A stretch of 64,000 nt of DNA from Diadema antillarum (GCF_040938485.1 NW_027271069.1:4154001-4218000), one strand, 5' to 3'. Positions 8,188-32,200 are shown, counted from the stretch's first letter. Made by a program: numbers and translations. Notes: generated from the letters alone by a model not told the origin.

Positions 8188-8939
8188 ATGATGAATGTTC
8201 GATATCAGTTGCGTAATTTAGGTTTCATAAGGATATATTTGTCTAAATCTGCCGCTGAGATACTTATTCATGCTTTGATTTCTTCTCGGTTGGATTTTTC
8301 GAATTCATTGTTATGTAATCTTCCAAAAAAAAAAATGTCACAAAACTTCAACGGTTGCCAAAATTCTGCTGCCCGATTGTTAACTTTTACTAATAAGTTT
8401 GATTCCATATCACCAGTTCTCCGTTCCTTGCATTGGTTACCTGTAGAAAAAAGGATTATTTTCAAGATTCTGTTATTAGTACATCATTCAGTTCATTCTT
8501 TCTCCCCCGTATAAGTAATTCTGTTCAAAAATACAATTCGACACGAAGGCTACGTTCATCATCAGACACATTCATACTCCAAACACCCAGAGTAAAACAT
8601 GGGTATGGTGATCGTGCTTTTTCCGTTATGGGACCAAAATCGTGGAATCAGTTGCCTCTTCAGTTAAGGGAACTGTCATCTACAGTCATTCAAATCCAAC
8701 CTTAAAACGTATCTGTTCCTTTCATACTGAGGACTGTAATTGCTGTACGTCATTAATGTTGGATCAATATTGTATTTTTAATTGGTATATGTTGCATTCT
8801 TATTTGGTATATATTTGTTTTTGTTTACCATTTTCTTCTTTGTTGAAATGTTTGAATATGTATATACATGTAAATATCTTTTCATTTCTGAAGCGCCATG
8901 AGCACTTAAAGTGGACCTGTGCGCTATACAAGTAGCCAC

Positions 8940-8975
<36 letters not shown>

Positions 8976-8995
8976 CATTATTATTATTATTATTA
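8188..8995 (+). mobile_element. L2-clade LINE 3' fragment (frameshifted RT C-terminus) with (ATT)n tail
   Basis: Motifs LIHALISSRLDFSNSLL, QNSAARLL, ISPVLRSLHWLPVEKRIIFKILLL, RRLRSS and GDRAFSVMGPKSWNQLP. 3' end GCGCTATACAAGT followed by (ATT)~18. Confidence 0.9.
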
Positions 8996-10452
8996 GAAAA
9001 AAACCCAGTATTATTTCCCATCGCGATATCTCGGTAAAATCAGTTGTCAAACATTCATTATCTTCTATTCGTCTGATTAAGCGCATCTCTGTTTATACAC
9101 TTTGTTTTTCAAAATAGTGAGAGGGGGAAAAGAAAGCGCTTAAATAATTGAGATAGAAAAAAAACAGAGTAATAGGTCAATAGCACTCGAACTGAAGGGG
9201 CGAAAAGATACGAAACAAACACACAGTAATGTAGTGATTGTATTTACTGTCTGCGTCCTAGAAGCCACCCTTTGAATCTTGGTCTCGGGGGGCTCTCCCG
9301 AAATCCCGCTTTCCGCGCACACCTGATTAGCTACCGGTAATTACTCCGCGAGCGCGCTTTCACGCCCTAACCGTTTCACACCAATTGATTTCGCATGAGA
9401 AGAGAGCTCCACCTCGTCAGTATACCGCTTCTTTGTTGATGTATCTGCCCAACTGGCGATTTCGAGATGAAATCTGTCTAAAAAGCCAAGCACTCACCGG
9501 CATATTTTCTTTAGGAATTCAATATATCAAACAAAATTAACGTTAGGCGGAGAGCTATTTCTGCCTCTTTTTCCTCGGTTTAGTCACGGGAGAGGAAGCG
9601 GGCGACCGCGCATTAATCCAACCCAAAGCATTTATTGTCTAATGAAAGACAAGAACAGATATAACGAAACAGATTACATAAGGATATCCCCCCCCCAAAA
9701 AAAAAAAAAAAAAATCGTTTACCTACATTACAGAATATTATAAAGGTGTGATAAATAATGACAAAAGATGTCGCTGGAGCCCAGATTTTTGAGGCTTTCG
9801 ACATTATTTTGTTTTTTGTCTAAATACCTCAGTTTTATTTGTCTGCACAAACAGATGGATTTATGCCTAATAAGTACTAAAAAGATACATAAACAGAGGT
9901 GTACGGGATAGATGGAACATAAAATGAAATAAGCTGTATGGAATACATACAATAAACACAACTGGAAATTTCGCATACATTGTATTTTGCGATTACATAA
10001 CATAAAAGGACGTATTTCTAGAACACCACAGCTAAGTAGACATGTATGGTTGAAATATTGATACACCGAACACAAATACATGTAGCGCAGCTCGTGGATG
10101 AAGTTATCCGTTCTTTTATGTCATACAGCTTGTTTATTGTCAAGTGTTTAAAAAACGTTATACACGTACTGAAATTACGTCCATTCCGAATATACAGTTC
10201 ATTCTATATATTCCATTGCGTATTATTTCATTCTGTGTTCCTCTTTGTATCCCATGCACCTCCGTTTATATCTCTTTAGTGACCATCCGTTTGTACAAAG
10301 AAGGCCGAGGAAGACATAAAGCAAATGTCAAAATCTTTCAATAATCTGGCCTCCTGATGCGACATCCTTTATCATCACTTATCACACCTGTGATACTCTC
10401 CAAAGATGACAAAGCCAACGATATAGTTCAGCAATAATCCATTCCAGTATAT

Positions 10453-10504
<52 letters not shown>

Positions 10505-11058
10505 TACTCAACATGTGCCTGTGTGTGTAAAATGATTTGTGCATCCTATACGGTAGGCAAAGGATTTCTTAGCTGCTGTCATATTCGTGTCCACTGTAGT
10601 ACAACAGGATAATGTTATTTCGCTTACATGTACTCCCCTTCTCAGTAAAAGGCAATATTTATACTGTGTTAATGGTTTTAACACGAACAGTATGTTTTTC
10701 CTTCTTATATGTAATACTATGAAAACTAGTTTGTCATAAAGTGTGTTTAAAACGAAATGATTGCTATTTGTTTGTTTCATTTAAGATACGGAAATAAAAG
10801 AAGTGACAATAATTGTTACTTCTTATTTTCCATGAAAATAACTAGCAAAACAAAATCACGTTAAAAGCCTTTGAAACAAATAGATTAACAAATAAAACAA
10901 TGGGAGGGAAGTATATGTGAAGTAAAATGTTGATCGGTGCAGCATAGCAGTACAATGGATTACATAATAATATTCGTCATCACTTTATCAAGCCTGCATG
11001 GCAGGAAAACTCTTTAAGGAGTTACTTTCTTTTTAAGATTAAAGGAATACTTGTAAGA

Positions 11059-11449
11059 TTAAAGGGATCATAATACTGTAGTTTTGGTTGAGACCTCATT
11101 TCAGGTTTCAAACAATTTTTGATGATATGAGAAACTTCTTATGAAATATGAAAGAGCATGTATTTCCAAGAGGGATTCCGTGTCTATTTGAAAATTGGTT
11201 TTGAAATGGCTTAGATATTCAAAACAGAGCAATCCTAATAAAAGGTAGGATCCACCTTTTATTAGGATCGCTTTGTTTTATTTGTTTTTGGGTGTCTCAG
11301 CCATTCCAAAACCGTTTATCTGATAAACTTTAAATTCCTCTCAGAATGGTATGCTCTGTAGCATTTCACAAGTGGTTTCTTGGTATCTCGCAAAAAGTTT
11401 AAAGCCCGGTCCTCATCTCCGTCAATACTATACCACCCCTTTCACTTAA
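11059..11449. mobile_element. TTAAAGGG-type MITE (inverse copy of 39010-39405)
   Basis: Shares GTTTTGGTTGAGACC, TTTTGAAATGGC and CTCGCAAAAAG blocks with the 39-kb copy; central palindrome CTAATAAAAGG...CCTTTTATTAG. Confidence 0.8.
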
Positions 11450-11738
11450 ACGCAGTGAGAGAAAAGGATGTAAAAAAATAAAAATAATTATAATAAATAG
11501 ATACAATATACCATTCCAGCTCTGAATATTAATGATCTTTTGTAGTAATGTGGTTTAGGCTGAGGTGTAGACAAAGATTATTTTCAAACGTGTGGAATAC
11601 AAACTGTATATGATACAGTAGTGCTGACGAGATTGAAAATCGTAAAAGAAGTACAAGTACATGTAGTACATGTAGTAGTATTAGAAGTAGTACACTGTAG
11701 TAGTAATCATGGTGATCATGTCAGTACAAATAATCATC

Positions 11739-11965
11739 NNNNNNNNNNNNNNNNNNNNNNNNNNNNNNNNNNNNNNNNNNNNNNNNNNNNNNNNNNNNNN
11801 NNNNNNNNNNNNNNNNNNNNNNNNNNNNNNNNNNNNNNNNNNNNNNNNNNNNNNNNNNNNNNNNNNNNNNNNNNNNNNNNNNNNNNNNNNNNNNNNNNNN
11901 NNNNNNNNNNNNNNNNNNNNNNNNNNNNNNNNNNNNNNNNNNNNNNNNNNNNNNNNNNNNNNNNN
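11739..11965. other. Assembly gap (N)
   Basis: Run of N. Confidence 1.
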
Positions 11966-13074
11966 AAAAGTTTGTTGTAGCAATGTTTACTATGACAAGT
12001 CTCTGGAATGGGCACAGTGTTTGACAGGATTTGCCTTTGTTGTGTGTCTGCAACAATAGTACTCTTCAGCAGACCCTGCACTCCATGCACATTCACAATA
12101 GAAAAAAAAAAACACTCAGACAAAGTGTCAATGTCACATCTACATACAAGTACACAGGGCACAACATGTATTTGGAAAATGGTGTTTTCATGACAACAGA
12201 CTGTGATGCTACCTCCGACATTATAACAATGCAGAAGCATTAAATCATGACACCTTCAATACATGTACACTAGATACTGTATATACATAGTTTTACGAAA
12301 ATGCAGCAACATAAACTTGTAATCACAAAATGAGCCAGTTTCTGTCTGTGTGGCCATTTAATGAAAATAATACCCCTAGTCCACCATAACTGATCACGAG
12401 GGCATTGCAAACAATTCTTCCCATATTCAGTGTTCATTTCCATGACATGCAACAATCAAAGCTACCACAGCCAACAGCCCATTCACTATTGAAATATTAT
12501 ATAGAATTTCTGATTTGGGGTACACCATTGTATCAACCACAGCAGATACAATTACTATAATTAGCCAGTGGAGCGTGTACTTCATTCCTTTATGTAATGT
12601 GGACTCTGGTGTCCCAGTAAAGGTGTGGAAGTGCATTACTATGGTAACAGGAGCTGAAAGTTTCATGAACCAACCCTAAGGGGAAACACTTCGTCGTCAT
12701 AACAACAGGTTAACATATTTTCCAAACCTCGTTCATTCACTTTGTCCCGACAGCAAATACATTGCATCTTGTCAATTCTAAAGGACTGATTACTGTGTAT
12801 ACACTGATCAAACCAGTGCATCCCATTTAACCTTTACATATCTTTATCAACTACACCTCACAAGATGTCAATGACAAAAAGGAATTAGTGGTCCTCAGAG
12901 AGTTAAAAAGGCACCAATCAAAATGATCACACTTCTTGAAACTATCAATTAAAGGGGAAATCTGCTCTAAAAATTAGTTTGTGTCAATAGAAACAATAAT
13001 GAGGAGAACAGGACAGCAAAAGATTGAGCAAATTCTGATAAAAATGGAAAAAAGAATTGAAGTTGTATCAATTA

Positions 13075-15175: not shown

Positions 15176-16058
15176 ACTAGAAATGTCGCTACAGCGACTG
15201 GTTATACCCCCGCCAAACAACATTTCATAAGCTTTGGTCAAAACAACATTTCATAAGCTTTGGTCAAAAAACTGAGGAAGTAGTTAAATCCGCAAGATCT
15301 TTCCTTGATCTTCTGCCATTAATATGCCGTTACCATGGCAACGTACTTTCGGGTACTGTCGAAAAATGCGTCTTGCACATCTACAACCAAAGGCACACAT
15401 ATGTACCAAGTTTCATGGAAATTGGGCAAAAACTGAGGAAGTAGTTTGCAACACAAAATTTTCCATCATTTTGGCTCATAATATGTGAGCTGTTACCATG
15501 GCAACATACTTTTTGTCACTGTCAAGAAATGTGTCATGCTGACCTATATCCTAAGACAAACATTCAATATGAATTCCATGAGAATTGGAAGAACACTGAT
15601 GAAGCAGTTTTGCCATGAAGCATTTTGCCCTATATTTTACCAATAACATGCCGTTACCATGGCAACGCACTTTTTGCCACTGCGGAAATATGTGTCTTGA
15701 ACATTAACATATTCAGATGAACATCTGTACCTAATTTCATAAAAATTGATAAAAAACTGTGGGAGGAGTTCGCGACGCAAGATTTGTACCCATTTTTGCC
15801 CATAATATGCCGTTACCATGGCAACGTACTTTTGGGTATTGTCAAAAAATACATCTTGCACATCTACAACCCAAGGCACACATCTGTGCCAAGTTTTATG
15901 GGAATCGGTTAAAAACTGAGGAAGTAGTTCGCGACGCAAGATTTGCAACGGACCGACCGCCCGCCCGACCGCCCGACCGACCGCCCGACCGCCCGACCGA
16001 CCGCCCGTCCGCTGATTCCTATATACCCCCTTCAAACTTCGTTTGGCGGGGGTATAAA
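15176..16058 (+). mobile_element. HINE/Tsp/pearl-like element, copy B, with four ~160-bp core repeats
   Basis: Same 5' end as copy A, with subTIR TTATACCCCGCCAAAC. Core repeats carry GTTACCATGGCAAC at 15329, 15492, 15653 and 15812. (CCGA)n microsatellite at ~15950-16010. 3' hairpin TATACCCC...GTTTGGCGGGGGTATA. Confidence 0.75.
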
Positions 16059-17216
16059 AATAGGAATGTTATCAAGAGATTATTAAAGCAGAGGGGTGAA
16101 GACTTTAGTCAGTTGTCTCTCTCTGTACAAATGTATAAGACTGAAACTGCTGATCTATACATTGTATCATGTCAGAGAAAGGAACCAGGGGGGAATGTTC
16201 CTATTAAACAGGAACAGTTGGCAGGAATGCTCTTTTCCTAAAAAATGCCACTTGATCTTCAGAGATTAAAGATCAAGGAATGCCCTGATACATTTCAAAG
16301 AGCATTTGACTTAGACAAAAGTCGCTAGTCAAATTCACATCCTGTATGCAGGGTCTACTGAGAGAGTCCTAATCCTTGCGGGTTGGCAGCGTGAAAACGT
16401 TGAATTCCTGTGGTGTAACCACATTGCCTACAGAATCATTCTCAACGATACATATATTACTGTATGTCAAAAAAAAAAACACAATTACAACGGGACCCTC
16501 CGCAATGATATCTTTGAGAATATTGAATCAATCTTAATACATATTCAGGGTATGAAACTATAACTCATTGCCCACATCTTCCAGAAAACCCCATTCAATT
16601 TGCTTCAGTGGTCAAAGAGAAATGAGGAGTTTTGTAGAGGATGTCAGAAATCTCTTCTATCCAAGTTGTGTCTATTGTATTCACACACAAGAGCATCGAA
16701 ATGCTAAACTAGGAAGAATCATACTCATGACATGCTTTACAACAATCCACATTTCTCTGTGACCACTTATCAAAATCAAATGGGGTTTTCTGCAAAATAG
16801 AGCTAAGGTGTTCCATTTTAAGACTTTGAAGTAGCATTTAGACAGTTTAATCATATTGGGTGTTATCAATGTGAAAATCGGATTGTAATTCTTTTTGGGA
16901 CATACTGTACATGTACACACAATATCCACTCTTCCTGATGACAGTGAATAATATATCAGTCATAGTCTTTGAAATCACTGCACTGTCAAAGCACAGGAAT
17001 GACTGGACCCCCATGACCACATGTCATTCATTTCATATGGTGCAGAGCAGGGAAACTGGGCATGAAGGAACACTTCCAGCCTCATCCTTGGATTGGTCGG
17101 TCAAAGTGGGTGTGTCTGCACAGCTAGGAAATGATTGGATGAGACGGATTCAAAGGTTGTCCAGAGTCATACTTCCAGTGTTGACCACCACTATCCTACT
17201 ACCAGAGGTCCAGGCA

Positions 17217-20200
17217 TCATTGCCTTTCAAACATGGCTTTCAGGATGGCATAGCTCTCACTGTATCGGGACTGGTTCAGTTGAGATGCCGTCTTCCAGCT
17301 GGAGAGAAAAATAAAAAAACAAGACATACCTTGTATGGGTGTATATTGCTCTATTATGATACAGTGCACTCCCGTTATAGTGAACACGGTTGTAACAAAC
17401 TTTTATATGCAACGTACACAATAGCAAAATCAACATCCCCAAATTATCATCTATATACCGTATCTTGATACACTGTATTTGTTTGGCTATAACGAAATTT
17501 TGATACAGTGAAAAAAAAACCTATCGGCCCCACGGACCTTAAAGCCCGGTCACACAGCGCCATACGGCTTAATCACGGCCAAAACCCATCAAAAAGTGGT
17601 CTCCGATGAAGCAGACGATGTTGTTCGCGTTGATGTCAAGTTTAGGACGAGCTATGGTCAATTTATAGACGTGGCAGGACGTGGGGAAAAATCGGAACGG
17701 CGTTGGATTTTAGCCCGCGAACAACCACGGGCGGCACACGTGGTAAAGATGTGCGACACACGTGAAACACACGTGATGATCTGAGTTCTGGCAGTGATTA
17801 AAACTTGGGATACGCGGTAAGATGCAAAAGTCTAGCGGTCTGTCACGGGCAGAGCACGGTCATCGAACGCATGTTACGCATTGCTACACGGGAAATAGCG
17901 TGTGTTTAGCGGCCTATCACTGACAAATGGATTTTTCCGCGTACATAGCACTACCTAAGCCTGTTAAACGACGTCTCAAACAAGTTCTAAATACGATTGA
18001 TCACTGCCTAATCACTTCTGTATCACTTCTGATTTGCGGCATATAAATACATGTACAAAGTATAAAGTTCATATGAAATGAAAGGAAAATATAAACTGGA
18101 TTAAGACAATTACCTTCTATTAAAAGTTAGAAGATAACTGTCTTAACCCAATTTGTATTTCAATTTCATATGTACTTTGTCATTTCTTTTTTTGTTTGCT
18201 ATTGCTTTATTCTTTTTTTAAATTTTTTCATTTTGTTCTAACTTCAAATTTCACTTACTTTAATTATTTTTTTTTCAGTGGATGGTCATTTATTCAAATT
18301 TCTTTGTTTCTAATTATTAACCAGAGAAAACAGTAACACATTTCACACTTTGTACCAATTTTATTGGCATATTTACAGCAATGCATACACACCCAATCTT
18401 CTCAACCTAACAAACAATAGCATACACATGCACACATAGCTAATACTGGTCCTTGGCAGCCTAAACTAAGAATCAACTAACTAGCTAATCCTCAGATGAA
18501 GTGGAGTCCTGAGTCTGCTGTTCCTGAGGCCTGATCTGTAGTCCAGGAGAGGTGGCTGACTCATTGGGAGTGTTCATGGATGTCTGAGAGGCAAGGCTGG
18601 ATCTGCCTGCAGGTGGGAGCATGGTACTGTCCAAGCTGAGGTTAGCGGTGAGGTTAGCGTTCCATTCATCCCCCTGCATCACGTGCTGCTGCTGCTGGGG
18701 GTAGGTTGGCTGCTGGTCAGAGAACTGCGGAGGTGTAGGAGAGGGTGTAGTATCATTCTTCCGCATGGGGGGTAACGAGGTCTGCTGCATCAAGCGGCTG
18801 CCATACTGCCAGTTCTGCTGATACTGTGGGTTGTGCTGCCGGAAGCACTGCTGGCAGCTGTAGGGCTGGTTGAACTGCTGGTTTGAGGGCTGGCCGCGCA
18901 CTATGTCAAAGATCAGGTCCTTCATCTTGTCGTACTGCTCCTGGGGAGCTGTACGCAGGGTGTCAGCAACAAACCGTACGAAGGGCTCACGGTCAGACTT
19001 GGGCCTCTCCTCAACAAACTTCTCCAGGAGGGCTTGGTTGGCCTGCATGGTGGCGCGGAGTTCTCGCATCCAGGTGTCTTCCTCTTCCTGGTACTCTTCA
19101 TCCCTCCTCCTCTTGTCACGCTTCCGGCTGCGGCTGGACGTGGATGTGGGCTGAGATGTAGAGACCTGGTCAACAGCTGCGGACTCCACGTCCTCGAGGA
19201 CGTGAGCATGCCTGTCACCATCAGAGTCCACTGAGGCCGAGGGGGAGGGGGGACGTGAGACCGTGGACGTGGACGTGGCAGTGGCAGAGGCAGAGGCAGA
19301 GGGGACCCGGGTTAGAGTGACGAGGGGATCTCTGGTGTCACTGGAGATGGAACCTGAAAGGTTTAGAACATTCATTTAGTTATATGGCATTGACATTTTG
19401 CACGTAAAAGCACTTCATACATTGAAATGTGAAACGAAATTGACAAATGCAATGAAATTCAAAACACGTTTGAAATCAATGTAATGAAATGTACTGACCT
19501 TTGTAGAAGCCACAGTGCTGCAGGACCCAGGTCTCCCTCTCTGTGAGCATCTTGGTCACCTGGCCACTAGTCTTCTTGGAGAGCTTCACATACCAGTCCT
19601 TTATTCCTTTCCACCACTGCTCTAGGTGCTTCACATTGATCCCCAGCTCTTGGGCCTTCATCTCCCAGGCAGCCCTCTTCTGCTTGTAGGTCTTCTTGCT
19701 GCGCATCCAGAGGTAGGAGTTGCCCCTCAGCCACTCAAGAATGTCCTCCTCTACAGCAGTGTCAAGACTCCAGTCCTTCTTGGGGGCTTTGGGGGCAGCC
19801 TTCTCCTTGCCCTTGCCCTGTCCACGTCCAAGGCCCTTGCCTACGAGCACTGGCTCTTCTTCCTCGTCCTGAGCAGCTTCCACAAAGAATGTTTCTCCTT
19901 CCTGAAGGGCTGGGGGGCTGACTTCTCCAAGCTCCACGGGGGCCTCAGGGGTGGCAGCAGAGGTAGTGGTAGCAGTGGTAGCAGCAGGGGTAGTACCTGT
20001 ACATGAAAAATATATTCATTTAGTGACACGCTTCTAATTTTCTATTTCTAAATTGAAATTCAAAATTGAAATTTGAAAGTAACAAAATTTGCAAATGAAA
20101 AGACATTGAAATGAATAAAATAAAATGTACTGACCATCAGCAGCAACCTCAGCTTCTCCAGGAGCAACAGGACCAGCATCAGCCTGAGGGTCAGGGTTTG

Positions 20201-23200
20201 GACTGGCAGCACCAGCAGGAGGAGCATGGACCTGGACTGTCACCTGGGCCTGGGAGTCTTGGGGAGACTCATCCTCAGCTGGGGCTTTGGTATTCGTTGA
20301 CCTCTTCATGGCAGGGGAACCCTTCTCCCTGGGCATGATGAAACTGAAAACACCGAACGAACTTGCGTGGAAGTGTGGACTGTACAAGATCTGGATCGGC
20401 AACTGTGAAGACCAGCCGTGCGCGGCTGCTTTTATGCCGCACTTCCGACGCCGCCGAGCCACGGTTACCCGTCATTGGGCAGTGCTATGGTAGTGGAGTG
20501 CCCGTTTTACGTCCGTGCTAAACATGTGATTGGCAGTGCTACAGACGCGATGAGGCCGCGGTTAGCCGTGGTAACTTGCCTCTTTTTTTTCCCGCTTTCA
20601 AACACATGCGAACCTTTTTTTAGCCTTACAAGTGGCTGGACATGGTTAGCCGTGCTTTAGCAGTGGAACAGCCGCCGACGGCCATACCCCGTACAAAGCA
20701 CAGTCAAACCAACATTGACCTAAAATTACCACTTACGACTACATCCCCCAAATTTTCATAACTTTTTGTACGTGATTTAGACATGGAGTGCTGTGTGACC
20801 GGGGCTTTAATACACGGAAACTCCATAGAACAATTGGGACTTTCATTTTGCCCACGAGGTAAGTGACATTCGGCTAATCCAAGGTCGAGGTAACAAGGTT
20901 GACTGTACAACATACTTTCTCTTTTGTAACAATGTCCTTAGATTGATATACATGTACAAATACACAAATGCAAGTGACACTACAAAGAAGGTCCCAACAC
21001 ATTGAGTCCAACTTGTAGGAGAGTCCCCTCTTTAGCAAATATTCATGTCAATTAATTCTTGAACCACAGGACTACTTAAGATGAATATTCAGTCTATTTG
21101 CAGGTCTGCAAGAGTAATGGCCCTGTCACACCTTTACGCTTTAGCCAATGTATGAAAAAATTGACGAATAAACATCAAATATGTTACAGGTACCACGGAT
21201 AAGCCACCTATGGATAGGAGTTCAGCGCACTGGTATACAGTTTAGTATGGCAAGATCGTTCAAGTCTTTATTAAGCATGCATAAAACTTTTGGAGGTATA
21301 TGCCCTGCACACATGTACCATAAATTGTAGGTACCGTAGTCAAAATGCATCAAGATAATGCCTAGCGCACCCATAACATATATTTAACCTATCAAGTAGT
21401 ATGCTTGGTACCTAATCAAACTCACCTCCCACACACTTCGATGTATGTAGACGTATTCGACGTTTTCTGGACAACTACAGAATTTACTGAGTGTGTTTCT
21501 AAATTACACATACCATATGATGACATATGGGTAGCGTTCAGGCGAACTGGTTTACACAAATGGGATTCACAGGAGGAATCCATCTGCATTTCTCAAGACA
21601 CTATGGTTACTGTCACACAAGGAATGTTAGTGTGCATTCTAATTTCATAAATTTCGCGAGACCCAAGATGTGTGAATTTAAAATGCATGAGGACCACGCA
21701 TCCTTTACCAACTTCCTTGTATATGTCCCTAGCGATGTACGATGAGCTGCTAGCCACAGTAGGTCCAAGGATTTTTTTTTTCCCTCATATTTGGCCGTAT
21801 TTCCGAGTTACTTGTATTGCGGGTTGGAAGATTCACACTCATTTTAGCTGACTTCATCTTGAAGTGGAAATTGCTTTCAAAAAAAAAAAGATATCAAATA
21901 GCTCAAGCCTCCCTCAGCACAGTTGAGCCACTCATCCACCGTGAAAAATTTGGGCCATCTTTGCCATAGGGTAGGAGAAAATCATGTTTTGTTTTTGAAT
22001 GGGTCTACATGTTCTCAAGTCAAGTGCAGACATTATTTCTGTAAATTAGCAAATATGATGACATGTATATACAGTAGGTGCATTGAATCAATGAACTGTG
22101 AAATTCCCAAAGCAAATGGATCGTTTCCAAGGTTGCAGACGCATCTTAAATCAATTCCACATCATGGCCATGATTCAAGGAACAATTTACAGTTCACTGT
22201 TTAATTGTACATGTATTCCACATTATTTTCATAAGCAGTCATGAAACGGAATCAATTATCACTTCGTGAAACATAAAACTGAAGTCATCTTGATATTTTC
22301 TTGCTAAAGTATCCCTGTTTCAGCTACTTTATTTTAAGGCCTCTCTAATGGACCTTATCCATAAACACACACATTCACACCAACACAAGTATACACGTGC
22401 AGGCATACACATTCACTTATACTAACCCACTCATATACTCGTTAACTCAACTGCAAGCATTACACTACACACGCTTATGTGCGCATAGTCAAATATAAAC
22501 TTCGCACAAACATACATGCATGCTTGCTATTGCACACACACTGACTCACAAATGCACCTCATCCTTCCTCCGTCATTTTCATTCACTTCATTATTTTCTC
22601 CATCTCTCTCATTTGAGCTGATTTATGACAAGTCATCCATGAATTTTCTTTGAGGCTGCTGCTGTGGAAGCCAAGCACTTCATGTACGACAATGTTTATC
22701 CGCATTTCTGTTAGCATGCAGCTTGATTTATTGACAAGACACAAGTTCTTTTATGAAATCAACACATATTTCATACAAAATATTTAATTTGACCATTGCA
22801 TCTTATATCTATGATATGTCTCGTGTATGCTTCAAATCCTTATATATCAATTTCTTTTTTGTTATTGTATATTTTTTGAGTGGAAAAACTGAAATTCAAA
22901 AATGAAATGAATCAAATCATATACTACTTGGTAGTTAGCAATCAATAAACATATTCATCAACCCCACTCTTTTCAGCAACCAATTAAAACATGTTTGTAT
23001 GAGGAAGTGACTATTTTATAATTACCTAAAATGAAGAAACAAAATTTTAAAGTTTAAACATGTAATGTTATAAACCATTCTTGTTGGTCTGAACTTGAAT
23101 GCCATGTTACTTTAGTAGGACTTACCCTAACTAGGCCAGGGGTCTGGGGAGCCTTGCAGCAGCTACATTTTATACACTCAAGTTTTGATACCTAATTTGT

Positions 23201-26200
23201 GCAGCGTTGACCATGATTTCGGTAACAGATTACAATTATCAATCACAAGTTCAGCAAAATGATCAAATTCTTAATTTGCCTGTGTATTAGCCTATGGCTT
23301 TTAAAAAAAAAAAATACTCCAAAAATCAACACCATTCTTACTATTACAATATCATTACCTATGTTATGAATGCAATTTCTGGTTGGTAAAAAAAAAAAAT
23401 AAAAAAAAAAGATAATGAAACTTACAGAAAAAGAAATACATAAGAATAAAAACAAAAATATGAAGAATAAATATCAGCTTGTTATTTGCATGCTACTATT
23501 TATATTCATGATTCATAAATATACAATGTAAATACACTGAAAAAAACAAAGTTTTATCACATCAACATATGACTCTTATTTGTCTGCTTACAACCAATAT
23601 TCAAGCCATTTTCACTAATATATCATAGCAAAATAATGATTAAATAACTAAAATAAATAAATAACTGAATAACTAAAGTCATGAAAATGTGCATATCATA
23701 TAATAAAAAAATAAAAACGCAAACAAGAAAATACATCACACTTTATTCTACACATATTATTTTATAAATATGGCAATTTTCGTGCACATTGAGTTGACCT
23801 TTGCCGAAATATATTGAGGGGCCTGGGAGGCCCCCCAGCTTTAAGAACTCTCGAAATACTCTGGCTCAGTTAGGATTAAGACCAATGGTAACATTTTGTA
23901 GACATGAAAGACATGAATTACTTGTCACTAAAACACTCAGTAGTAATGAACATCTTTGATGATGGATCTTGTGCATACTTCAGACACAATGAAACAAATG
24001 AAACAACAAAATTAATGACAATGGTCATACATGACAATATACAACGCTACAAAAATGGCTAAAACACTGGACTGTTTCTCTTAGTCGTGAGAAGCACATA
24101 ACTGTTACTGTCACTAGTTCTTCTCTGGTGGTGGAGGTCTCTTCAGCTCCCCAGAGATGCTGTCTGCAGCATCAGAACCACTGGACAGGTCGAGCAGTCC
24201 TGAGCATCCAGAGATGCAGAGGCGGATCCAAGAATTCTGTAAAGGGAAGGTGCCTTTACAGAATTAAAGGGGGCGCATTTGCCCCCCCCCCCCTCATTTT
24301 TCTCTTTTTATTTCTTTTGTGTTAACAAAAAATAAAGAGGGGGTGCGCCCGGTGCGCCCCCCTCTGGATCTGCCACTGAGATGTAAGAACACAGACTCTG
24401 ACTGTGACTGTCCATGGCGCTGGGCTCTGGTTCAGTATCTGATAGACGACCCTAGAGTAGCATACAGTGGCATGCTTGGCTGCTACTTCAGGTACTGTAG
24501 CTGCAGTGGCTGCATGCAAGTACACTGGTTCACACAGTCGGCTGTCTGTGAACCCTAGACTGGACGCAGTCGGTGCCTTGTGTCTGCACATGTGGGGAGA
24601 TGGCTAGTACATCTCCATCGCCATAGGGTGTGGGTAGCTGGTGCTAGACTGGGTCACCGGGAAACAGGAGCTGGAAAGGTGGGGAGTCTGGAAGGTTAAT
24701 CCTCATCACTCTCATCCATCAGCTCACCGAGGATGATGTTGATGCGTGACCGCGCCTTCCGGAACTTGCGCTTGGACATGCCAAGCAGGCTGTCACGCAC
24801 GTAATTGGCAAAGGTAACAGCAGCTGAGATGGGCTGAGGCTGAGAGAGACTTTTGAAGAGCTCCTCAAACTCGGTCACCTTCTTCTGGAGTGACTGCAGC
24901 AATGGGTCATCCTCCTGACCATGCCTGTCCCTGGGTTGTGAGGATGAGGAGGGGACAGAGGGGGGCATGCTGTCATCATCAATCACAATGGCAGCCTCAG
25001 TAGCCTTGGTAGCCTCAGTAGCCCTGGCAGTCTCAGTAGCCCTGGCAGTTTCATGGTCCCTGCTGTGTGCTGCCGTGGTTGCCTTCATCTGCAATAATGA
25101 CAATTGATTAGTGAATACAAGGCAAAAATGCAAGGCAAATTTAAAGATTATTAATGAAAGCAAAATTTAATATCAAATACATTAGAAAACAAATGGTAAT
25201 AATTGTACTGAGGTATACTTACAGCGTTCATAGACCTGGCACGATGGCGGACAACAGTTTTGAGGAAGCTGAAGTTTGCCTTCACCCACTGTTCCCTCTC
25301 TGTCAGTTCGCGGGCACCCTCACCGCCCTTAATCCTGTCGAGACGGGTGTGGGTGTCTCGCACAGACTTAAACCAGCCTTGAAGATGCTGAGCTGTCTTC
25401 CCCATGATCTTAGCTTGATCCCTCCAGAGCTTCGCCTTCTTGTCCAACCTCCGATAGCCCGTCTTCTTGATGTCCCACAGGATGTTGTTCTTGCGAATGA
25501 AATCGCACATGAGCTGCTCCTCGTGGACTTCAAGTACAAACTGCACCTTCCTGACCCTCTTCTTCTTAGGGAGGGCTGGCCCAGGAGAGGTCGAGGCCAC
25601 GGACACAGTTACTGATGCCACTGACCATCCATCATCTCCATCAGAGGGTGAGGGTAAGGGTGAGGCTGTGAGTGATGATTGATCTTCCCTGCATCCATGT
25701 CCATGTCCAGAAGACTCCCTTGGCATGTCGGTGATGTCAATACTGCGATGTAAAAGTGCCGTTATGATTTGAATCGAGCAGCAGCCTTTCATAGGCTACT
25801 ACACAAATCATCAGAGATGCACTGCTGCATGCTATGCTTGAAGCTAAAACATGTTTTCAAATATAAAACATTCTCCAACAACCACGTTCAGGTAAGCTCT
25901 GACACTGCAGCAATTCTGGTGAACCTTTTTGGTATATATAGTCTGCATTTCTGCCATTACCTAATTGCATTCTTTCACACGGTGTATACGTGTACAGATA
26001 AGAGCAGAAATAGACAGTTTTGCGAGCACACAAGAAGTATGTTTTGGCTTTAAGTTGTGAACGCCGGCAATAAGCTCGGCATTCGTTGGTATAACTTATC
26101 TATAAGTTATTGAAATGTTCTGTCTAAAGTTACTAACACTCTACATATAGGTCCTATGTGAAAATCATCAGCAAAAAGCTATGTATATGCCCAAAATTGA

Positions 26201-29200
26201 AAAATACATTGTAATCCAGTGCCAGCCTAATGTTTTAAAGAAATCTTTAGACATCGGCATGCACTGGCTAAATCATCATGGTGTGACAGGGCCATTACAA
26301 AAAGATGAAATTTGTAACTGGGCCACAATTTCAAAGATTTGGTTAAGTGGGGACTGTGGGGACTCTATAGCATAAAGAATAAATATTCCATAGGAAATAT
26401 ACATCCTCACTTCTTCTTGGTACTTACTCATTCCTGATGTCTTTCCATCTCTGAATGTGGCCATTTAGAAGTGTTTCTTTGGATGGAGCCTGACTGGAAT
26501 CCTACATTGAGGGGGAAATAATTATCAGAATTAGACAAAATATATCAAAACAAAAAAACTAAACAGCAACAAATGGAAAAAAAAAAAAACCCACTCTTTT
26601 GATAATTTGAGAACAGAGCTTGGAATATTAATCAGTGTTTATTTTTTGTCATATTAAAATCAATATATTATAACGCGCATCATTTATCGTTTTACACTTT
26701 TAATGTAATACCACTTTATCAGTAGGGACATTTGTGAGTTGGAATGTACAACTGAATTTGTCATGTCTGTGCAGCTGTGTGTTGCTGTTGTTTTAAACTT
26801 TGGTAAGAGACAGTCAAGCACAATCAAATAAAGCAAATCTTGTAAGAGGCTGTTATTAGTGTCTGTGCATGCCCATTGCACTACATACCACCACATAAAA
26901 AAGCAATACAGTTTGGATCTAATAAGTCATTGCCAAGATACTGTAGCTAAGGGCACTACTGACTCATTCTAACACCCGACCATAATTAGTCCATCGCAAT
27001 TCATTCCTTAAAGCTGTACTCATGCAAACTTATTTTAACACAAAGCCTTTCTCCACGCAGTCAAAGAAAGCATAGTATCTCAGTGAGGTCCACGAGGGGT
27101 TTTAGCATGTCGCTGCGACATGCTAAAATTTTTGCGCGACATCCTTCAAAACTTGCGACATTCTAAGCGCCATGCCAATAAAACTGCGACATGCTAAAAG
27201 TAACTAACTCGCAAATGACTTACGAGAGTGCTCCTTGTTGAAAGGAGCAGCAGTTTACAAGCGCCAAAAGTTTATCCACAGTCACCGCACCGATCACAAC
27301 ACAACGCGGCTCAACAACAAGCTATCAGTACAACAGTCTCGCACAACACCACATCACACACTTGCTCACTATCTCCCTCACCTCCCTGCTCACATGTGTA
27401 TGCTATGGGATTGCGCTCTGATTCGGGATCCACACACACAGCAATTTGTGTGAAGTAACACCTATGCAGCGGCACAGACAGCCGCCTGTATGCATGTGAG
27501 AGGGAGAGAGAGGACGGAAAGAGAGGGTCGGAGGCCGAGGGAGGCTGAGGAAGGCTGACACGTGCTCGCTTGTTGTCACGCTTGTTGTCGGGTTACGCAA
27601 AAACAAACGATATGAAATGCATGCCCCCCTTCGCCAAAGGTTGTATTTTATATATATATATATATTTTTTTTTTGCTGCTTTGGTTTGTCTGTTCGTTTG
27701 TCTGCCTGTCTGTCTCTCTATTCGCAAAATAGGTCAAAAGTTGGGAACAGATTAGGATGAAATTTCAGGAACGGTTGGTTGGTAAAATGGCGCAAGGAAC
27801 AGATGATTAAATTTTGGTAGTGAGAAGGATTTATGATACCACTGGAATTCAACGTCAGGATATCCAGGATTTTTTCTTAGACTTTGTTTCGTATATTTGA
27901 AAGGATTCGTATCAATTCTATAGGAAGCTTGCCATCGGCAATAGCAATTACGCAAAATTAGATGCGTTCAAAGCATTGCCGCAGAGAGAAAATTACCTCC
28001 ATCTTTCGTTAAAAAAAAATCAAAAACAAAAACGAACGATGGAGTAAGCAAATGCAAATTGTTTAATCTTTTTTTTTTTGGTAGATTCAGCGGGTTAGTT
28101 TTTCTCTAAAAAGCCATGCGTTCCATTTGAACCTTTAGTAAGTTAGATTTTACTCGAGCGCCGAAGTTGAATTTATCCCAAGGATCTCGTCGCAATACCG
28201 AGTTTCCAATGTGTATTCATTTTCGCGTAGCTTTCGGTGCTGCAAAATTTTGCTAGGGCCTAAGTTTAATACTAAACTAATTTCTGTCGTTTCTCGCACC
28301 TCGTTTGGTACGATTTCTTCCCTTTTATATCACTTTATCCGTTCCCTTTATACTTTGAAGTAATTAAACGTAATTCCGTGTCTCGCCCTGTTATTTTTGT
28401 AACGGCGATTTCTCCGCTTCGCTGCAATACTTTTTCGAATCGAAGCGACGGAGCTCGGAGTTTGATCCCAGCAGCCGCTTCGATGTGCTGTTTGTTGTAT
28501 TTTCTAAATAAAAATGTTTGTGTTGTTGGGAGGTGTTGATACTTTGTATTTGTTATTTATTTTCCTAGGTATTTATCTCGAGGGATTAGGGCCTATGCGT
28601 GTTTCTTAATGTTGATAGGAAAAGGCTAAAATGATCTTGAGTGATGTCTGATGGTGATGATGATAACTATGCTGGTGACTGGTGTAAAAAGACGGATTCC
28701 TGTGAATGCTGAGCGTACGTGACGTTTGTTTATTTCCCTTTCCCTCTTACTCTTCTTTCCCCCTTACTCTCCTTTCCCCTCTCAAGAATGATAAAAAAAG
28801 AAATTACATACACCTCACAACAAAAAGAACCACGTGCTATGGCAACCTTCGTAAAGTTCAATCTAAATGTTCAATATCAGCAAAGAATAAGGGGAAAGCA
28901 CGAATGACAATAAATAAAAGCGAAGAGATCGTGTATGCAGTCTCTTCGGCTAGAAGAAACTTGACACCCCACCCCTCTCCCTTGTGGAAATTTCCACAAA
29001 AGCAGGTGCCACACCCAGGTGCGTGCCAGACGAAAGAATGCGCGCACTGGAATAAACAGCGTGTAAATATCCTGGAAATATCCATCGAAGAACCAGCTCA
29101 TTAGTTGAATTAAAGGAATCATTGCAAAGATATCATGATTCTATTTCTATAGCCTTTCTTTTGGCGCATAGTAGGAAACATCGAACAGTCGATTATAGTG

Positions 29201-32200
29201 TACTTGATCGAATATCTAATGTTCCCTGAACAAATAAAAAAAGGATTGATTATTCAGTCAATTAAAAATGCAATCACAGAAATACATGAATTAAAGGTCT
29301 CGTATGACCAGACAAATTCACTACGAGTACAATTGTAGGTCCAGTGAGATGCAGTCATCACCTGGTTTAATACAACGTGTAATGACAATTAATTCCAGTT
29401 CACGCTCATCAAAACTGCTTATTACTTTTCAAAGTTTTGGCTATCAACATTCGTTCGTGGGTGTATTTTGTTTGTTTGTTTGTTTGTTTGTTTGTTTTGT
29501 GTGTTTTTCTCTCGTGAAAGGCGTAATGATTTCTTCGTATCGAACGTAAACTGCATGTTTACCGTAAACAAGCCATTCAGCTCAGCTCAGCTATGGCGCA
29601 TTCGATCCATCGAACTTGCAGTAACCTCTTACAGGCAGGATCGAGCACATGGCGCATTCCTTTAAAGTGAAAACTAAGTTTCGGTAAGTGCTGGAGAACC
29701 CGTCTAGCACCATTTCATTTTGAACGTGAAGCCACGTGTTTGCATCGGCGCTTCCACACACAGCGCGGCATTTTGCGATCATCGTTATAGCAGAATTTCC
29801 GATTCCAGTCAGGGGAAAAGGAATTGGAATACTTCTGAAAATACTGATATTTAAAATCCAATAAAATAAAAAAGCCTGAAAACAACGCATGATTATGTTT
29901 AAATAGTAAACAATAATTGGAAACACAGAACAGAGTTTTGCATCCGCTCACACAGAAGCTCTCTTGAGAAGATGAAAGCATTCCCCGTCCCCTGCTAGAT
30001 AGTGGAAGCTTCCATAATCAGCCCAGCAAGTTTTTGGAGGTACATACAGTTGTACTTGCACTTGTACACATTCATTGCGAGAAAGCAATCAATCAACGCT
30101 GAACATTGCGTAGTTTGGCATCTTTATCGTGCTGGTGACCAGCTCGATCCTTCGGCATGTGTCATAACGTTATGTTTAGAGCCTGTAGGCCTCATAAGTT
30201 GACAAGTTTAATTCAAAATAGCAAAAAAGAAAAAAAAAAGGAGATTGAAAAAATATGAATTCTGGTGGGAAAATACGAATTTTGCAGCTGCTGAGTACTA
30301 ATTTTTGCTTCCAAGGGTTGGCAGCTCTGTACTTTGGAAATTTAATTTCTCTCTGGAAAGGCTTATTGTGGATAGAATTATCTAGATCTGAGTTTTTGTT
30401 AAATGTCATTCAAGTTAACTAAACGTCTGTTTACCAGTAGGCTGCAAAAGTGCAGTTCTCACTTTTCTACACTCATCTCATCTACTTTGTGAGTACACAG
30501 TTATCTTGGCATTTCAATGTGAAACCAGGGAGGTGGCTCCTCCCTGGTGAAACTGAAAGTAAATAATATTAAAGACAGTCAGTGTGCTGTACTGTAGTAC
30601 AAGTTCAAGATGTCCTTGTCATTTATCATAGCATCCCCATTGAGGAGTATATCTATGCAAGATATATTCAAAAGGTCTTATGAGTAAGGAGTAGGACGAT
30701 ATATTAACATTTCAAGAACAATTTAAAATCTTATGTCATAATCAAACAATTAAACATAATTTTTCAAATATTAATGATTTTTATCCTGGCATTGCAGAGT
30801 GATCATGGTGATCAAAGTGTTCAAAATAAGGCTAAGATAGCACCAGAGAGCATCTAGAACCCCAGAGCTTCCAGGGCCCTTAAGCGGGCCCTGGACCCCG
30901 GCCGCAAGGGACTTCGCGCACATACTTTCATGCGCAATATCACTTTTTTCCCCCTGCAACATGCTAAAATTTCAAGTTGTGGACCACCCTGGTATCTACT
31001 CAAGCTACCATCTGTGTAGTAAAAAACCAATATGTCTGATTCCCTTCCAGGAACTTTAGTATTTTTCTGACCTAGGTAAGAAGGCCACCTGTTCAAAAGT
31101 CCACTCTGTATTGATTCCAACTGGTAGTTTCAAGTACAGTGTACATAGAACAAGTTTGGTTAAATGCAGACAACAGTGTGAAGAAGGAAATAAAGTTTTT
31201 ACAGCATTGATGTCCAGAGGTTCATCAGGGTGGGGTGTGACAGGGGGTATTCTGGGGTCCCTTGATAGCTCCTCTCTCATCTCATCAATCGTCTGGCTGG
31301 GTGAGGGGAGACGGTACACCAGACCATTCTCAGACTGAAAGAAATAAAAAGAAATTGCAAAACAAAACTGACAATGCACAGTAGCAGTTTTTGTATTCTT
31401 CAAACCCGAACACACCCCTTGTACTATATCACCTGAATCAGAATTGTAAAAAAATAAAAAAAAACTAAAAAAAAAGAATGGCAGCCCTCATTTTGTAAAA
31501 TTCAACAGGGCGGGTAGTGAACAGATACTGGTTCTTCATGGCATTAAAATGCAAACTTGATAATGACCCAACAAATTTCACAACAGTGAAATGTCATGGG
31601 CTTTCAAAGAATCTACTTAGCAATGATAGACCCCAGCAATCCACAAAACAGCACACAGAACATGTCATTTTGTTTCAAACTTTGAACATAATATATTCAG
31701 CTTTATCTTTGCATGTCAGCAGTCAGTATGTAAAGAAAAATCATGTATAATGTCAATAAATAACACACTGTGCTTAAAGTTACTAAACATATGAAATATC
31801 ATCAGTGATTTGAAATAGAAAACAAAACAAAACAAAACAAAACAAAATAAAACAAAAGTATACATGGGAGAGTTATCGGGCTCATGACTCACCATATCCT
31901 GGTCTGGAAGTGGCTCCGGTGATGGGGACTGTTCTTTGCGTGGGACTTTTGCTGAAGTCGAGTTGGCCATCCACGCTCGGCACACTGGGTAGAGAGGTGC
32001 GCTGGTTTTAAACTGAGCCAAATCAACGCTGCGATCAAACAGCTTCATCACATAGGAATCTGTGTAGGGCAGAGAGAAGCAAAGTTCATGCATGGTCGCA
32101 TAACTTGACAGCTCAAGCAATTCACTTGCATCGGGCACAAATCTACACATGTATGCAAATTTGAATAATGATAAGAGAGTCTGCATAATAAATCCGATTC

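What the first reader, a model, noticed from the sequence alone, without database searches (positions are those of the whole stretch)
17299..26427. Two unrelated MADF-cargo elements stacked co-oriented in the last intron of LIN37
Seen: about 8.4 kb of this 9.1-kb intron consists of E1 and E2, ~310 bp apart. Both carry a MADF+BESS-like gene transcribed in the host direction, with divergent proteins and related but distinct TIRs (GCCCGGTCACAC vs GGCCCTGTCACAC), and neither has a nuclease. Inference: the same architecture twice points to a class of elements rather than a one-off deletion, and to a hotspot or compound transposon. The elements' promoters, splice sites and poly(A) signals lie upstream of LIN37's last coding exon and could truncate transcripts of this MuvB/DREAM subunit. 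My phase check shows host-to-cargo splicing would be out of frame (phase 2 versus phases 0/1).
Basis: partly seen in the sequence, partly recalled or inferred. Interest (0 to 1): 0.7.

Follow-up and report, generated by a model that had tools for sequence, protein, structure and literature searches.

The report
Two transposase-less Harbinger transposons in LIN37 intron
The last intron of the sea urchin LIN37 gene is filled by two old cut-and-paste (PIF/Harbinger) transposons that each lost the cutting enzyme but kept the second, DNA-binding (MADF) gene; this is a known kind of decayed element, not a new class.

Summary
In this Diadema antillarum window, intron 17299-26427 (minus strand, GT..AG, phase 2) separates the last two LIN37 coding exons. 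92% of it is E1 (17542-20806) plus E2 (21118-26294), 311 bp apart. Each has inverted ends and an intact spliced MADF gene in the host's direction, and neither has a transposase.

- **MADF is not cargo.** It is the standard second gene of PIF/Harbinger transposons.
- **Full-length relatives exist.** Both elements have relatives with a convergent DDE_Tnp_4 transposase and perfect 3-bp TSDs: a priapulid and a pipefish for E2, two metagenome-derived contigs for E1.
- **E1** lacks exactly the 1.6-kb transposase segment. Its ends match a ~606-bp MITE family.
- **E2** keeps about 35 residues of the transposase.
- **The two are distant kin**, not unrelated (MADF profiles: E 5e-20).
- **No compound transposon.** Each occurs at this one locus plus its allelic haplotig.

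"MADF-only" Harbinger derivatives were described in Caenorhabditis inopinata in 2026. A hotspot and any effect on LIN37 transcripts remain untested.

E2's roughly 75% DNA identity to priapulid and fish copies points to horizontal transfer. The scan had already noted E1 on this same stretch (s1-208712).

The parts
26428..26504 (-). Penultimate LIN37 coding exon; its 5' border is approximate.
   Evidence: Pfam LIN37 is the only hit, at profile 116-138. The donor GT follows 26428.
17217..17298 (-). Last LIN37 coding exon, including the stop codon.
   Evidence: Pfam LIN37 is the only hit, at profile 140-159 of 159. The acceptor AG lies at 17300-17299.
17299..26427 (-). Last LIN37 intron: 9129 bp, phase 2.
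17542..20806 (-). E1: a MADF-only (transposase-deleted) PIF/Harbinger element. It is flanked by the TSD TTA at 17539-17541 and 20807-20809.
   Evidence: TIRs. The terminal register and TSD were set from 8 independent MITE copies and from L090. It is collinear with the two-gene element L090 except for the transposase segment.
17542..17947 (.). E1 end shared with the ~606-bp MITE family (the MITE 5' part).
   Evidence: 445 candidate copies; MITEs are 94-98% alike and 90-92% identical to the E1 ends.
20627..20806 (.). E1 end shared with the MITE family (the MITE 3' part).
18050..18057 (.). E1 deletion junction: L090:3778-5357, which holds the whole 421-aa DDE_Tnp_4 gene, is missing here.
20135..20336 (-). 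E1 MADF gene, coding exon 1 (ATG at 20336; the following intron is phase 1).
19499..19996 (-). E1 MADF gene, coding exon 2, containing the MADF domain.
   Evidence: Homologues are 76-90% identical.
18485..19353 (-). E1 MADF gene, coding exon 3, with the conserved C-terminal motif and the stop codon. The three exons total 522 codons.
21118..26294 (-). E2: a MADF-only PIF/Harbinger element of a second family. Its flanks are TAA (21115-21117) and TTA (26295-26297).
   Evidence: TIRs. It is 70-77% identical in DNA, ends and non-coding parts included, to two-gene elements in Priapulus (L086) and a pipefish (L087).
25223..25726 (-). E2 MADF gene, coding exon 1, containing the MADF domain.
   Evidence: Pfam MADF 4e-5. 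Exon borders come from mapping the NCBI D. antillarum protein P0001.
24728..25088 (-). E2 MADF gene, coding exon 2, with the conserved C-terminal motif.
24114..24199 (-). E2 MADF gene, coding exon 3 of the annotated 316-aa model.
21668..21773 (+). Remnant of the E2 transposase N-terminus: about 35 residues, with one frame shift. The DDE domain is absent.
   Evidence: tblastn with the priapulid and pipefish transposase pieces gave 62-74% identity, E about 1e-5.
21774..24014 (.). E2-specific filler that replaces the transposase body. It is mostly unique in the genome.
24214..24389 (.). High-copy ~170-bp repeat nested in E2, lying in the intron of the annotated gene model.
   Evidence: 3889 candidates, repeat I5.

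Best explanation
E1 and E2 are two separate insertions of PIF/Harbinger DNA transposons from two distantly related families. They lie in the last intron of Diadema antillarum LIN37.

Canonical elements of both families carry two convergent genes: a Myb-like/MADF DNA-binding protein and a DDE_Tnp_4 transposase. Each copy here lost the transposase by internal deletion. E1 lost a clean 1.6-kb segment. In E2 the transposase body was replaced by 2.2 kb of unique filler, leaving about 35 residues. Both copies kept their inverted ends and an intact, spliced MADF gene, so they are 'MADF-only' non-autonomous derivatives.

Inferred from what is known of Harbinger3_DR (as summarised in PMC9710019), not shown here: the MADF protein binds subterminal sites of its own family and recruits or imports a transposase. 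On that basis these copies could move only with a transposase supplied in trans. The assembly shows no close cognate transposase; the best match to either family's enzyme is 64% identical. They are therefore most likely immobile relics. One possible exception is E1: its protein is the only MADF of its family in the genome and could still serve that family's recently amplified MITEs.

Their adjacency and shared orientation are best read as two insertions into a TE-tolerant intron, not a composite element.
For: Organism and gene: the E2 ORF is 99% identical to an NCBI D. antillarum protein.

E2 relatives: the pipefish element (within L087 about 7701-12100) has a perfect TTA/TTA TSD, a MADF gene on the plus strand and DDE_Tnp_4 ORF pieces on the minus strand. 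The priapulid L086 has the same layout. DNA identity to E2 is 70-77% and includes the TIRs.

E1 relatives: L090 has 43-bp perfect TIRs, a TAA/TAA TSD, MADF ORFs and a convergent 421-aa DDE_Tnp_4 ORF. L092 is similar. E1 aligns to L090 at 78-91% everywhere except L090:3778-5357.

TSD: E1 has TTA/TTA. In 8 independent MITE copies the left flank is T-N-A and the right flank T-W-A, and 4 of 8 pairs are perfect.

Within Diadema: MADF paralogues lie 2.5-4.6 kb from convergent DDE_Tnp_4 matches at 9 or more loci, including C278, C507, C269, C414, C731, C874, C181:2.33 Mb, C591 and C962.

Homology: the MADF domains of the two families align at E 5.4e-20.

Single locus. C1118 is collinear with the window at 99.5-99.8%, so it is an allelic haplotig.

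Precedent: MADF-only Harbinger derivatives are described in PMC13668399.
Against: - Neither element itself shows a DDE domain, so superfamily assignment rests on relatives, TIRs and TSDs.
- E2's flanks differ at the middle base (TAA versus TTA).
- Two rare MADF-only copies lying 311 bp apart is unlikely under uniform random insertion, and this reading does not explain it.
- Both ORFs are intact at one locus, and E2 is annotated as a gene, which would also fit domestication.
- Genome searches score only the best candidates, so a cognate transposase could have been missed.
Confidence: 0.85

Rival explanations
1. The two MADF genes are domesticated, or being domesticated, as host genes nested in LIN37. 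On this view they resemble NAIF1, DPM7, ALP2 or HDP2 and are kept for a regulatory role, and the TIRs are leftovers.
For: - Both ORFs are intact and spliced at a single locus.
- E2 is annotated by NCBI as a 316-aa protein.
- Diadema-branch changes in the E2 MADF exon are 18 synonymous to 16 non-synonymous, omega about 0.24.
- Both haplotypes carry them.
Against: - TIRs and TSDs are still recognisable.
- The C-terminal exons look close to neutral: E2 exon 2 has 6 synonymous to 20 non-synonymous changes, omega about 1, and E1 versus L090 exon C gives omega about 1.1.
- The branch tested includes time spent as an active element.
- No orthologue data are available, and no expression data were reachable.
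Confidence: 0.1
2. Functional partitioning. E1's MADF protein is the active trans-acting DNA-binding partner for its MITE family, and a transposase is supplied from a separate DDE-only locus, as proposed for Harbinger-1M_cIno.
For: - MITE copies are 94-98% identical to each other, which indicates a recent burst. Hundreds of candidate copies exist.
- E1 is the only gene of its MADF family in the assembly; the next paralogue is at most 42% identical.
- An intact 429-aa transposase ORF exists at C428:344222-345364 with no MADF match listed on that contig.
Against: - E1's ends are only 90-92% identical to the MITEs, so E1 is not their immediate parent.
- The C428 transposase is only 64% identical to the family's enzyme in L090.
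- Constraint on E1's ORF is weak: 9 synonymous to 18 non-synonymous changes, omega about 0.47, not significant.
Confidence: 0.15
3. One reading: a distinct class of nuclease-free MADF-cargo elements forming a compound transposon or marking an insertion hotspot.
For: The same architecture occurs twice, 311 bp apart, in the same orientation. The outer ends share the ...GTCACAC terminal motif.
Against: - Both have nuclease-bearing full-length relatives.
- E2 retains a piece of transposase.
- The pair occurs at no other locus, and E1-type MITEs occur alone.
Confidence: 0.04

Closest known systems
[quoted passage not shown]
   Same: TIR-bounded with a 3-bp TTA-type TSD, an intact MADF gene and no DDE ORF. 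They coexist with many non-coding MITE derivatives, and the cognate DDE source is scarce or absent.
   Different: - The nematode forms are multi-copy (19-25 MADF loci) and one was caught transposing. Here each MADF-only copy is unique and no mobility is shown.
- The phylum differs (echinoderm).
- The paper draws DDE and MADF genes head-to-head. Here the full-length relatives have them convergent.
Canonical two-gene PIF/Harbinger elements, for example zebrafish Harbinger3_DR (as summarised in PMC9710019 and PMC4482050)
   Same: Full-length relatives of E1 and E2 carry a DDE_Tnp_4 transposase plus a Myb-like/MADF protein, a TWA 3-bp TSD, and TIRs that start with A, T or G followed by GCCC/GGCCC.
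   Different: E1 and E2 themselves lack the transposase, so they are non-autonomous.
Domesticated Harbinger Myb-like genes (NAIF1 with HARBI1, Drosophila DPM7 with DPLG7, insect APM/LPM genes, plant ALP2 and HDP2; PMC9710019)
   Same: A single-copy, intact MADF/Myb-like gene of Harbinger origin sitting in host chromatin.
   Different: Domesticated genes have lost their TIRs, are syntenic across species, are under clear purifying selection, and are usually paired with a domesticated transposase. None of this is shown here, and the TIRs are intact.
Spy and ISL2EU groups of the PHIS superfamily (PMC4122938, PMC4482050)
   Same: E1's flanks read AAA|...|TTT, as at a Spy site. E2's flanks read AAT|GG...CC|ATT, as at an ISL2EU A|AT|T site.
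   Different: - Relatives show perfect 3-bp TSDs (TAA/TAA, TTA/TTA).
- The base 5 nt outside GCCC is T in 8 of 8 MITE copies.
- The TIRs do not fit the Spy GGANNNNG consensus.
- The elements carry a separate Myb-like gene, the PIF/Harbinger hallmark.

Membership tests
PIF/Harbinger superfamily | DDE_Tnp_4 (PF13359) transposase | tested here: not met
   There is no DDE ORF in E1 or E2; only a ~35-residue N-terminal remnant remains in E2. The feature is met in their full-length relatives L086, L087, L090 and L092, so E1 and E2 are filed as deletion derivatives.
PIF/Harbinger superfamily | Second gene encoding a Myb/SANT/MADF DNA-binding protein | tested here: met
   E2 hits Pfam MADF at 4e-5. 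E1's relative L090 hits it at 4.6e-5. The E1 and E2 family profiles align at E 5.4e-20.
PIF/Harbinger superfamily | 3-bp TWA target-site duplication | tested here: met
   E1 has TTA/TTA. L090 has TAA/TAA, L087 TTA/TTA, and the L086 mini-element TAA/TAA. Of the MITE copies, 4 of 8 pairs are perfect and the rest differ at one base. E2 itself has TAA/TTA, one mismatch.
PIF/Harbinger superfamily | Terminal inverted repeats | tested here: met
   40-41 nt arms; a shared 14-nt terminal register.
MADF-only Harbinger derivative (sense of PMC13668399) | MADF ORF present, DDE_Tnp_4 ORF absent, within TIR-bounded element | tested here: met
MADF-only Harbinger derivative (sense of PMC13668399) | Mobilised in trans by a separate DDE locus | not testable with these tools
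   The best transposase in the assembly is 64% identical to either family's enzyme. No mobility data exist.
Spy transposons | Insertion between AAA and TTT without TSD; TIR consensus GGANNNNG | tested here: not met
   The AAA/TTT look of E1-family flanks is explained by a TWA TSD plus TIRs that start AAG/AGC. Relatives have perfect 3-bp TSDs, and the TIRs do not match the consensus.
ISL2EU | 2-bp AT TSD in an A|AT|T target | tested here: inconclusive
   E2's flanks fit. The pipefish relative has T, not A, before the AT, and the priapulid mini-element's left end has no AT. The two-gene layout argues for PIF/Harbinger.
MADF-BESS proteins | BESS domain (PF02944) C-terminal to MADF | tested here: not met
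   There is no Pfam BESS hit at E<=1 in either protein or in relatives. A conserved C-terminal motif exists and aligns only weakly between the families, at 24% probability.
Domesticated Harbinger Myb-like gene | Loss of TIRs, cross-species synteny, purifying selection | tested here: inconclusive
   TIRs are retained. Omega is about 0.24 in the E2 MADF exon but about 1 in the C-terminal exons. Synteny is not testable because no other echinoid genomes were reachable.
LIN37 (host gene) | Match to PF15306 | tested here: inconclusive
   It is the only family hit for both exon pieces, at contiguous profile positions. Scores are 19.4 and 14.1 bits against a whole-protein cutoff of 27.

The most novel reading that the evidence does not exclude
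In a sea urchin, the DNA-binding and catalytic functions of a Harbinger family are split between loci. E1, the only MADF gene of its family, would serve a recently amplified MITE family of hundreds of copies, while a DDE-only locus (candidate C428:344222-345364) supplies the transposase. Sense-strand residence in the intron of the broadly expressed LIN37 gene would provide its expression. E2 would be a second MADF-only copy, from a family that appears to have moved between phyla, caught at the same permissive site.
Probability: 0.12. Interest if true: 0.5.

Novelty: new member of a known kind. Interest (0 to 1): 0.25.

Why it matters
This mainly corrects the record. The "MADF-cargo class" is the ordinary two-gene PIF/Harbinger design after loss of the transposase, a state already described in a nematode.

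Three modest points remain:
1. MADF-only derivatives arose independently in two families in an echinoderm. This suggests the Myb-like gene outlives the transposase repeatedly.
2. The E2 family is about 70-77% identical in DNA, non-coding parts included, among a sea urchin, a priapulid and a teleost, with synonymous divergence of 0.2-0.4 (Diadema-priapulid) and up to about 1.0 (Diadema-pipefish MADF exon). That is hard to explain without horizontal transfer.
3. Two sense-oriented genes with their own splice sites and poly(A) hexamers fill the last intron of a DREAM-complex subunit. That makes it a simple place to look for transposon-driven transcript truncation.

Tried and rejected
**Spy reading of E1 (AAA|TTT, no TSD).** Rejected after reading the flanks of 8 independent MITE copies and of L090.

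**ISL2EU reading of E2.** Left as unlikely.

**BESS domain.** No Pfam support.

**Subterminal binding-site repeats.** A k-mer count in the ends of E1 and E2 found nothing convincing. It gave only CACACGTG three times in E1 and a third CTGTCACAC at 21610 in E2.

**tRNA-derived SINE for the nested repeats.** ARAGORN found none.

**Transposase remnants elsewhere in E1 or E2.** tblastn found only the N-terminal piece at 21668-21773.

**Looking up the NCBI contig of P0001 to see the annotated LIN37 and E1 gene models.** Not on record.

**Steps that could not be done.**
The C428 transposase locus, empty sites and more MITE copies therefore could not be read, and I did not try another route.
All searches were exon by exon, by reference. 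In one search a script joined exons transiently, only to locate splice sites against P0001, and nothing joined was printed, saved or searched.
- Whether LIN37 reads splice cleanly across the intron could not be tested.

**Human rule.** The contig is not human (Diadema antillarum), so that rule did not apply.


Full report
**What is there**

The window comes from the sea urchin Diadema antillarum. The E2 ORF is 99% identical to an NCBI protein of that species, so the contig is not human.

On the minus strand, an intron with a GT donor after 26428 and an AG acceptor before 17298 (phase 2) separates two short exons. The only Pfam hit for either exon is LIN37, at adjoining profile positions 116-138 and 140-159 of 159.

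The intron is 9129 bp and holds two elements:
- E1 (17542-20806) is 3265 bp.
- E2 (21118-26294) is 5177 bp.
- The spacer between them is 311 bp.

The terminal motif GCCCNGTCACAC is strongly over-represented in the window, with 6 matches against 0.44 expected. Four of the six are the ends of E1 and E2.

**The genes**

E1 carries a three-exon, 522-codon open gene on the minus strand: 20336-20135, 19996-19499 and 19353-18485. Both introns are phase 1.

E2 carries the gene that NCBI annotates as a 316-aa protein: 25726-25223, 25088-24728 and 24199-24114. Its intron phases are 0 and 1.

Domain evidence is as follows:
- The E2 protein passes Pfam's MADF threshold.
- The E1 protein does not, but its 77%-identical relative does.
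- Profiles of the two families align over the MADF domain at 99.2% probability, E 5.4e-20, 29% identity.
- No BESS domain is detected. Each family has a conserved C-terminal motif, and the two motifs align only weakly.

**What the elements are**

Homologues of the E2 protein, at 67-73% identity, occur in a priapulid, a hagfish and several teleosts. The priapulid locus (L086) and the pipefish locus (L087) align to E2 at 70-77% DNA identity across coding sequence, non-coding sequence and the inverted ends.

In both loci the MADF gene is followed by convergent ORFs that are clear DDE_Tnp_4 / Plant_tran transposases. The pipefish element is bounded by a perfect TTA/TTA duplication.

E1 gives the same picture. 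Its protein has 76-90% identical homologues. Two of their contigs, L090 and L092, carry the MADF ORFs plus a convergent 372-421-aa DDE_Tnp_4 gene. L090 has 43-bp perfect inverted ends and a TAA/TAA duplication.

These are canonical two-gene PIF/Harbinger transposons (PMC4482050, PMC9710019). The MADF gene is their standard Myb-like partner, not cargo.

**How the copies here were damaged**

E1 aligns to L090 end to end except for L090:3778-5357, the segment that holds the whole transposase gene. The junction lies at about 18050-18057.

E2 keeps about 35 residues of the transposase N-terminus, with a frame shift, at 21668-21773. Its DDE part is replaced by 2.2 kb of mostly unique sequence at 21774-24014.

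These are two independent deletion events in two families.

**Target site**

At first sight E1 looks like a Spy insertion (AAA|TTT) and E2 like an ISL2EU insertion (A|AT|T).

Reading 8 independent MITE copies changes this. The base 5 nt outside GCCC is always T, the left flank is T-N-A and the right flank is T-W-A. Four pairs are perfect duplications.

With the perfect 3-bp duplications of the relatives, the register is a TWA duplication with 14-nt termini: AAGCCCGGTCACAC / AGCCCCGGTCACAC for E1 and TGGCCCTGTCACAC for E2. E1 then has TTA/TTA and E2 has TAA/TTA, one mismatch.

**Copy number**

The 1.75-Gb assembly contains many allelic haplotigs. Contig C1118 is collinear with window 16056-27080 at 99.5-99.8% and carries both elements, so it is the other allele.

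Apart from that allele:
- The E1 interior is unique.
- Both E2 ends are unique.
- E1's ends (17542-17947 and 20627-20806) match a ~606-bp MITE family with 445 first-look candidates.
- MITE copies are 94-98% identical to one another and 90-92% identical to E1, so E1 is a diverged relative of the MITE source, not the source itself.

Nothing suggests that E1 and E2 ever moved together.

**Context in the same genome**

The Diadema genome holds more than a thousand candidate Harbinger transposase matches. At nine or more loci a MADF paralogue lies 2.5-4.6 kb from a convergent transposase match, the same layout as in the relatives.

The best match to either family's transposase is only 64% identical. 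It is an intact 429-aa ORF at C428. No cognate enzyme for E1 or E2 is therefore seen, within the limits of a search that scores only the best candidates.

**Selection and transfer**

On the Diadema branch the counts are as follows:

| Region | Synonymous | Non-synonymous | Omega |
|---|---|---|---|
| E2 MADF exon | 18 | 16 | about 0.24 |
| E2 C-terminal exon | 6 | 20 | about 1 |
| E1, both exons | 9 | 18 | about 0.47, not significant |

This fits a gene shaped while its element was active. It does not establish domestication.

Synonymous divergence for E2 is 0.2-0.4 between Diadema and the priapulid, 0.16-0.48 between the priapulid and the pipefish, and 0.3-1.0 between Diadema and the pipefish. 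Non-coding ends are about 76% identical to the priapulid copy. This is far too similar for lineages separated since the Cambrian, so horizontal transfer is the likely cause.

**Comparison with the known**

A 2026 paper describes MADF-only Harbinger derivatives in Caenorhabditis inopinata. These include a family with no DDE source, and the paper proposes that the DDE and MADF functions can be supplied from separate loci (PMC13668399).

E1 and E2 meet the structural definition of that kind. Mobility in trans is untested here.

Domestication of Harbinger Myb-like genes is also well known (PMC9710019). It usually comes with lost TIRs and conserved synteny, and neither is shown here.

**What stays open**

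- Two rare MADF-only copies sit 311 bp apart in the same orientation. That is more than uniform random insertion would predict. I could not test a hotspot or a retention bias.
- Sense-strand poly(A) hexamers follow both genes. No transcript data were reachable, so the effect on LIN37 is speculation.

**Limits**

- The scan had noted E1 before on this same stretch (s1-208712). Its coordinates and 522-aa gene agree with mine.

Noticed in passing
window 27081-30991: This 3.9-kb stretch is present in the window but absent from the allelic haplotig C1118. It is bounded by inverted ends (TTTTAGCATGT... / ...ACATGCTAAAA), so it is a polymorphic TIR-element insertion in the next LIN37 intron or flank.
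   Followed up: partly
window 24214-24389: A ~170-bp repeat with an internal palindrome and 3889 first-look candidates in the genome, nested in E2 inside the intron of the annotated gene model. No tRNA-like part was found.
   Followed up: partly
window 21608-21690: A ~80-bp repeat with 693 candidates that starts with a third copy of the TIR core CTGTCACAC. It is probably a solo end or mini-MITE of a related Harbinger family, lying next to the transposase remnant.
   Followed up: no
window 25851-26053 and 23183-23412: Two further dispersed repeats of about 200 bp, 67-77% identical to many loci, lie inside E2.
   Followed up: no
window 31235-31246: A solitary Harbinger-like end (GTGTGACAGGGG on the plus strand) with no detected partner.
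   Followed up: no
L086 7563-12723 (Priapulus caudatus KQ715011.1): The priapulid locus carries the two-gene element plus extra copies of its ends. These include a ~920-bp mini-element at 11300-12219 with a TAA/TAA duplication, so this family makes MITE-like derivatives there too.
   Followed up: partly
E1 exons versus L090 and L092: Similarity is mosaic. The E1 MADF exon is closest to L092 (dS 0.12, against 0.54 to L090), while its C-terminal exon is closest to L090 (dS 0.10, against 0.47 to L092). This suggests recombination among family lineages.
   Followed up: no
window 20134-19997 and 19498-19354: Both E1 introns begin with the same GTCAGTACATTT and share T-rich TTTCAA-type motifs, as if one intron were a copy of the other.
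   Followed up: no
G000 C181:4519707-4520951 and C181:4530934-4531299: On the same contig, about 300 kb beyond the window's end (about 350 kb from the finding), lie an intact 432-aa Harbinger transposase ORF and, 10 kb from it, another MADF paralogue 34% identical to E1's.
   Followed up: no
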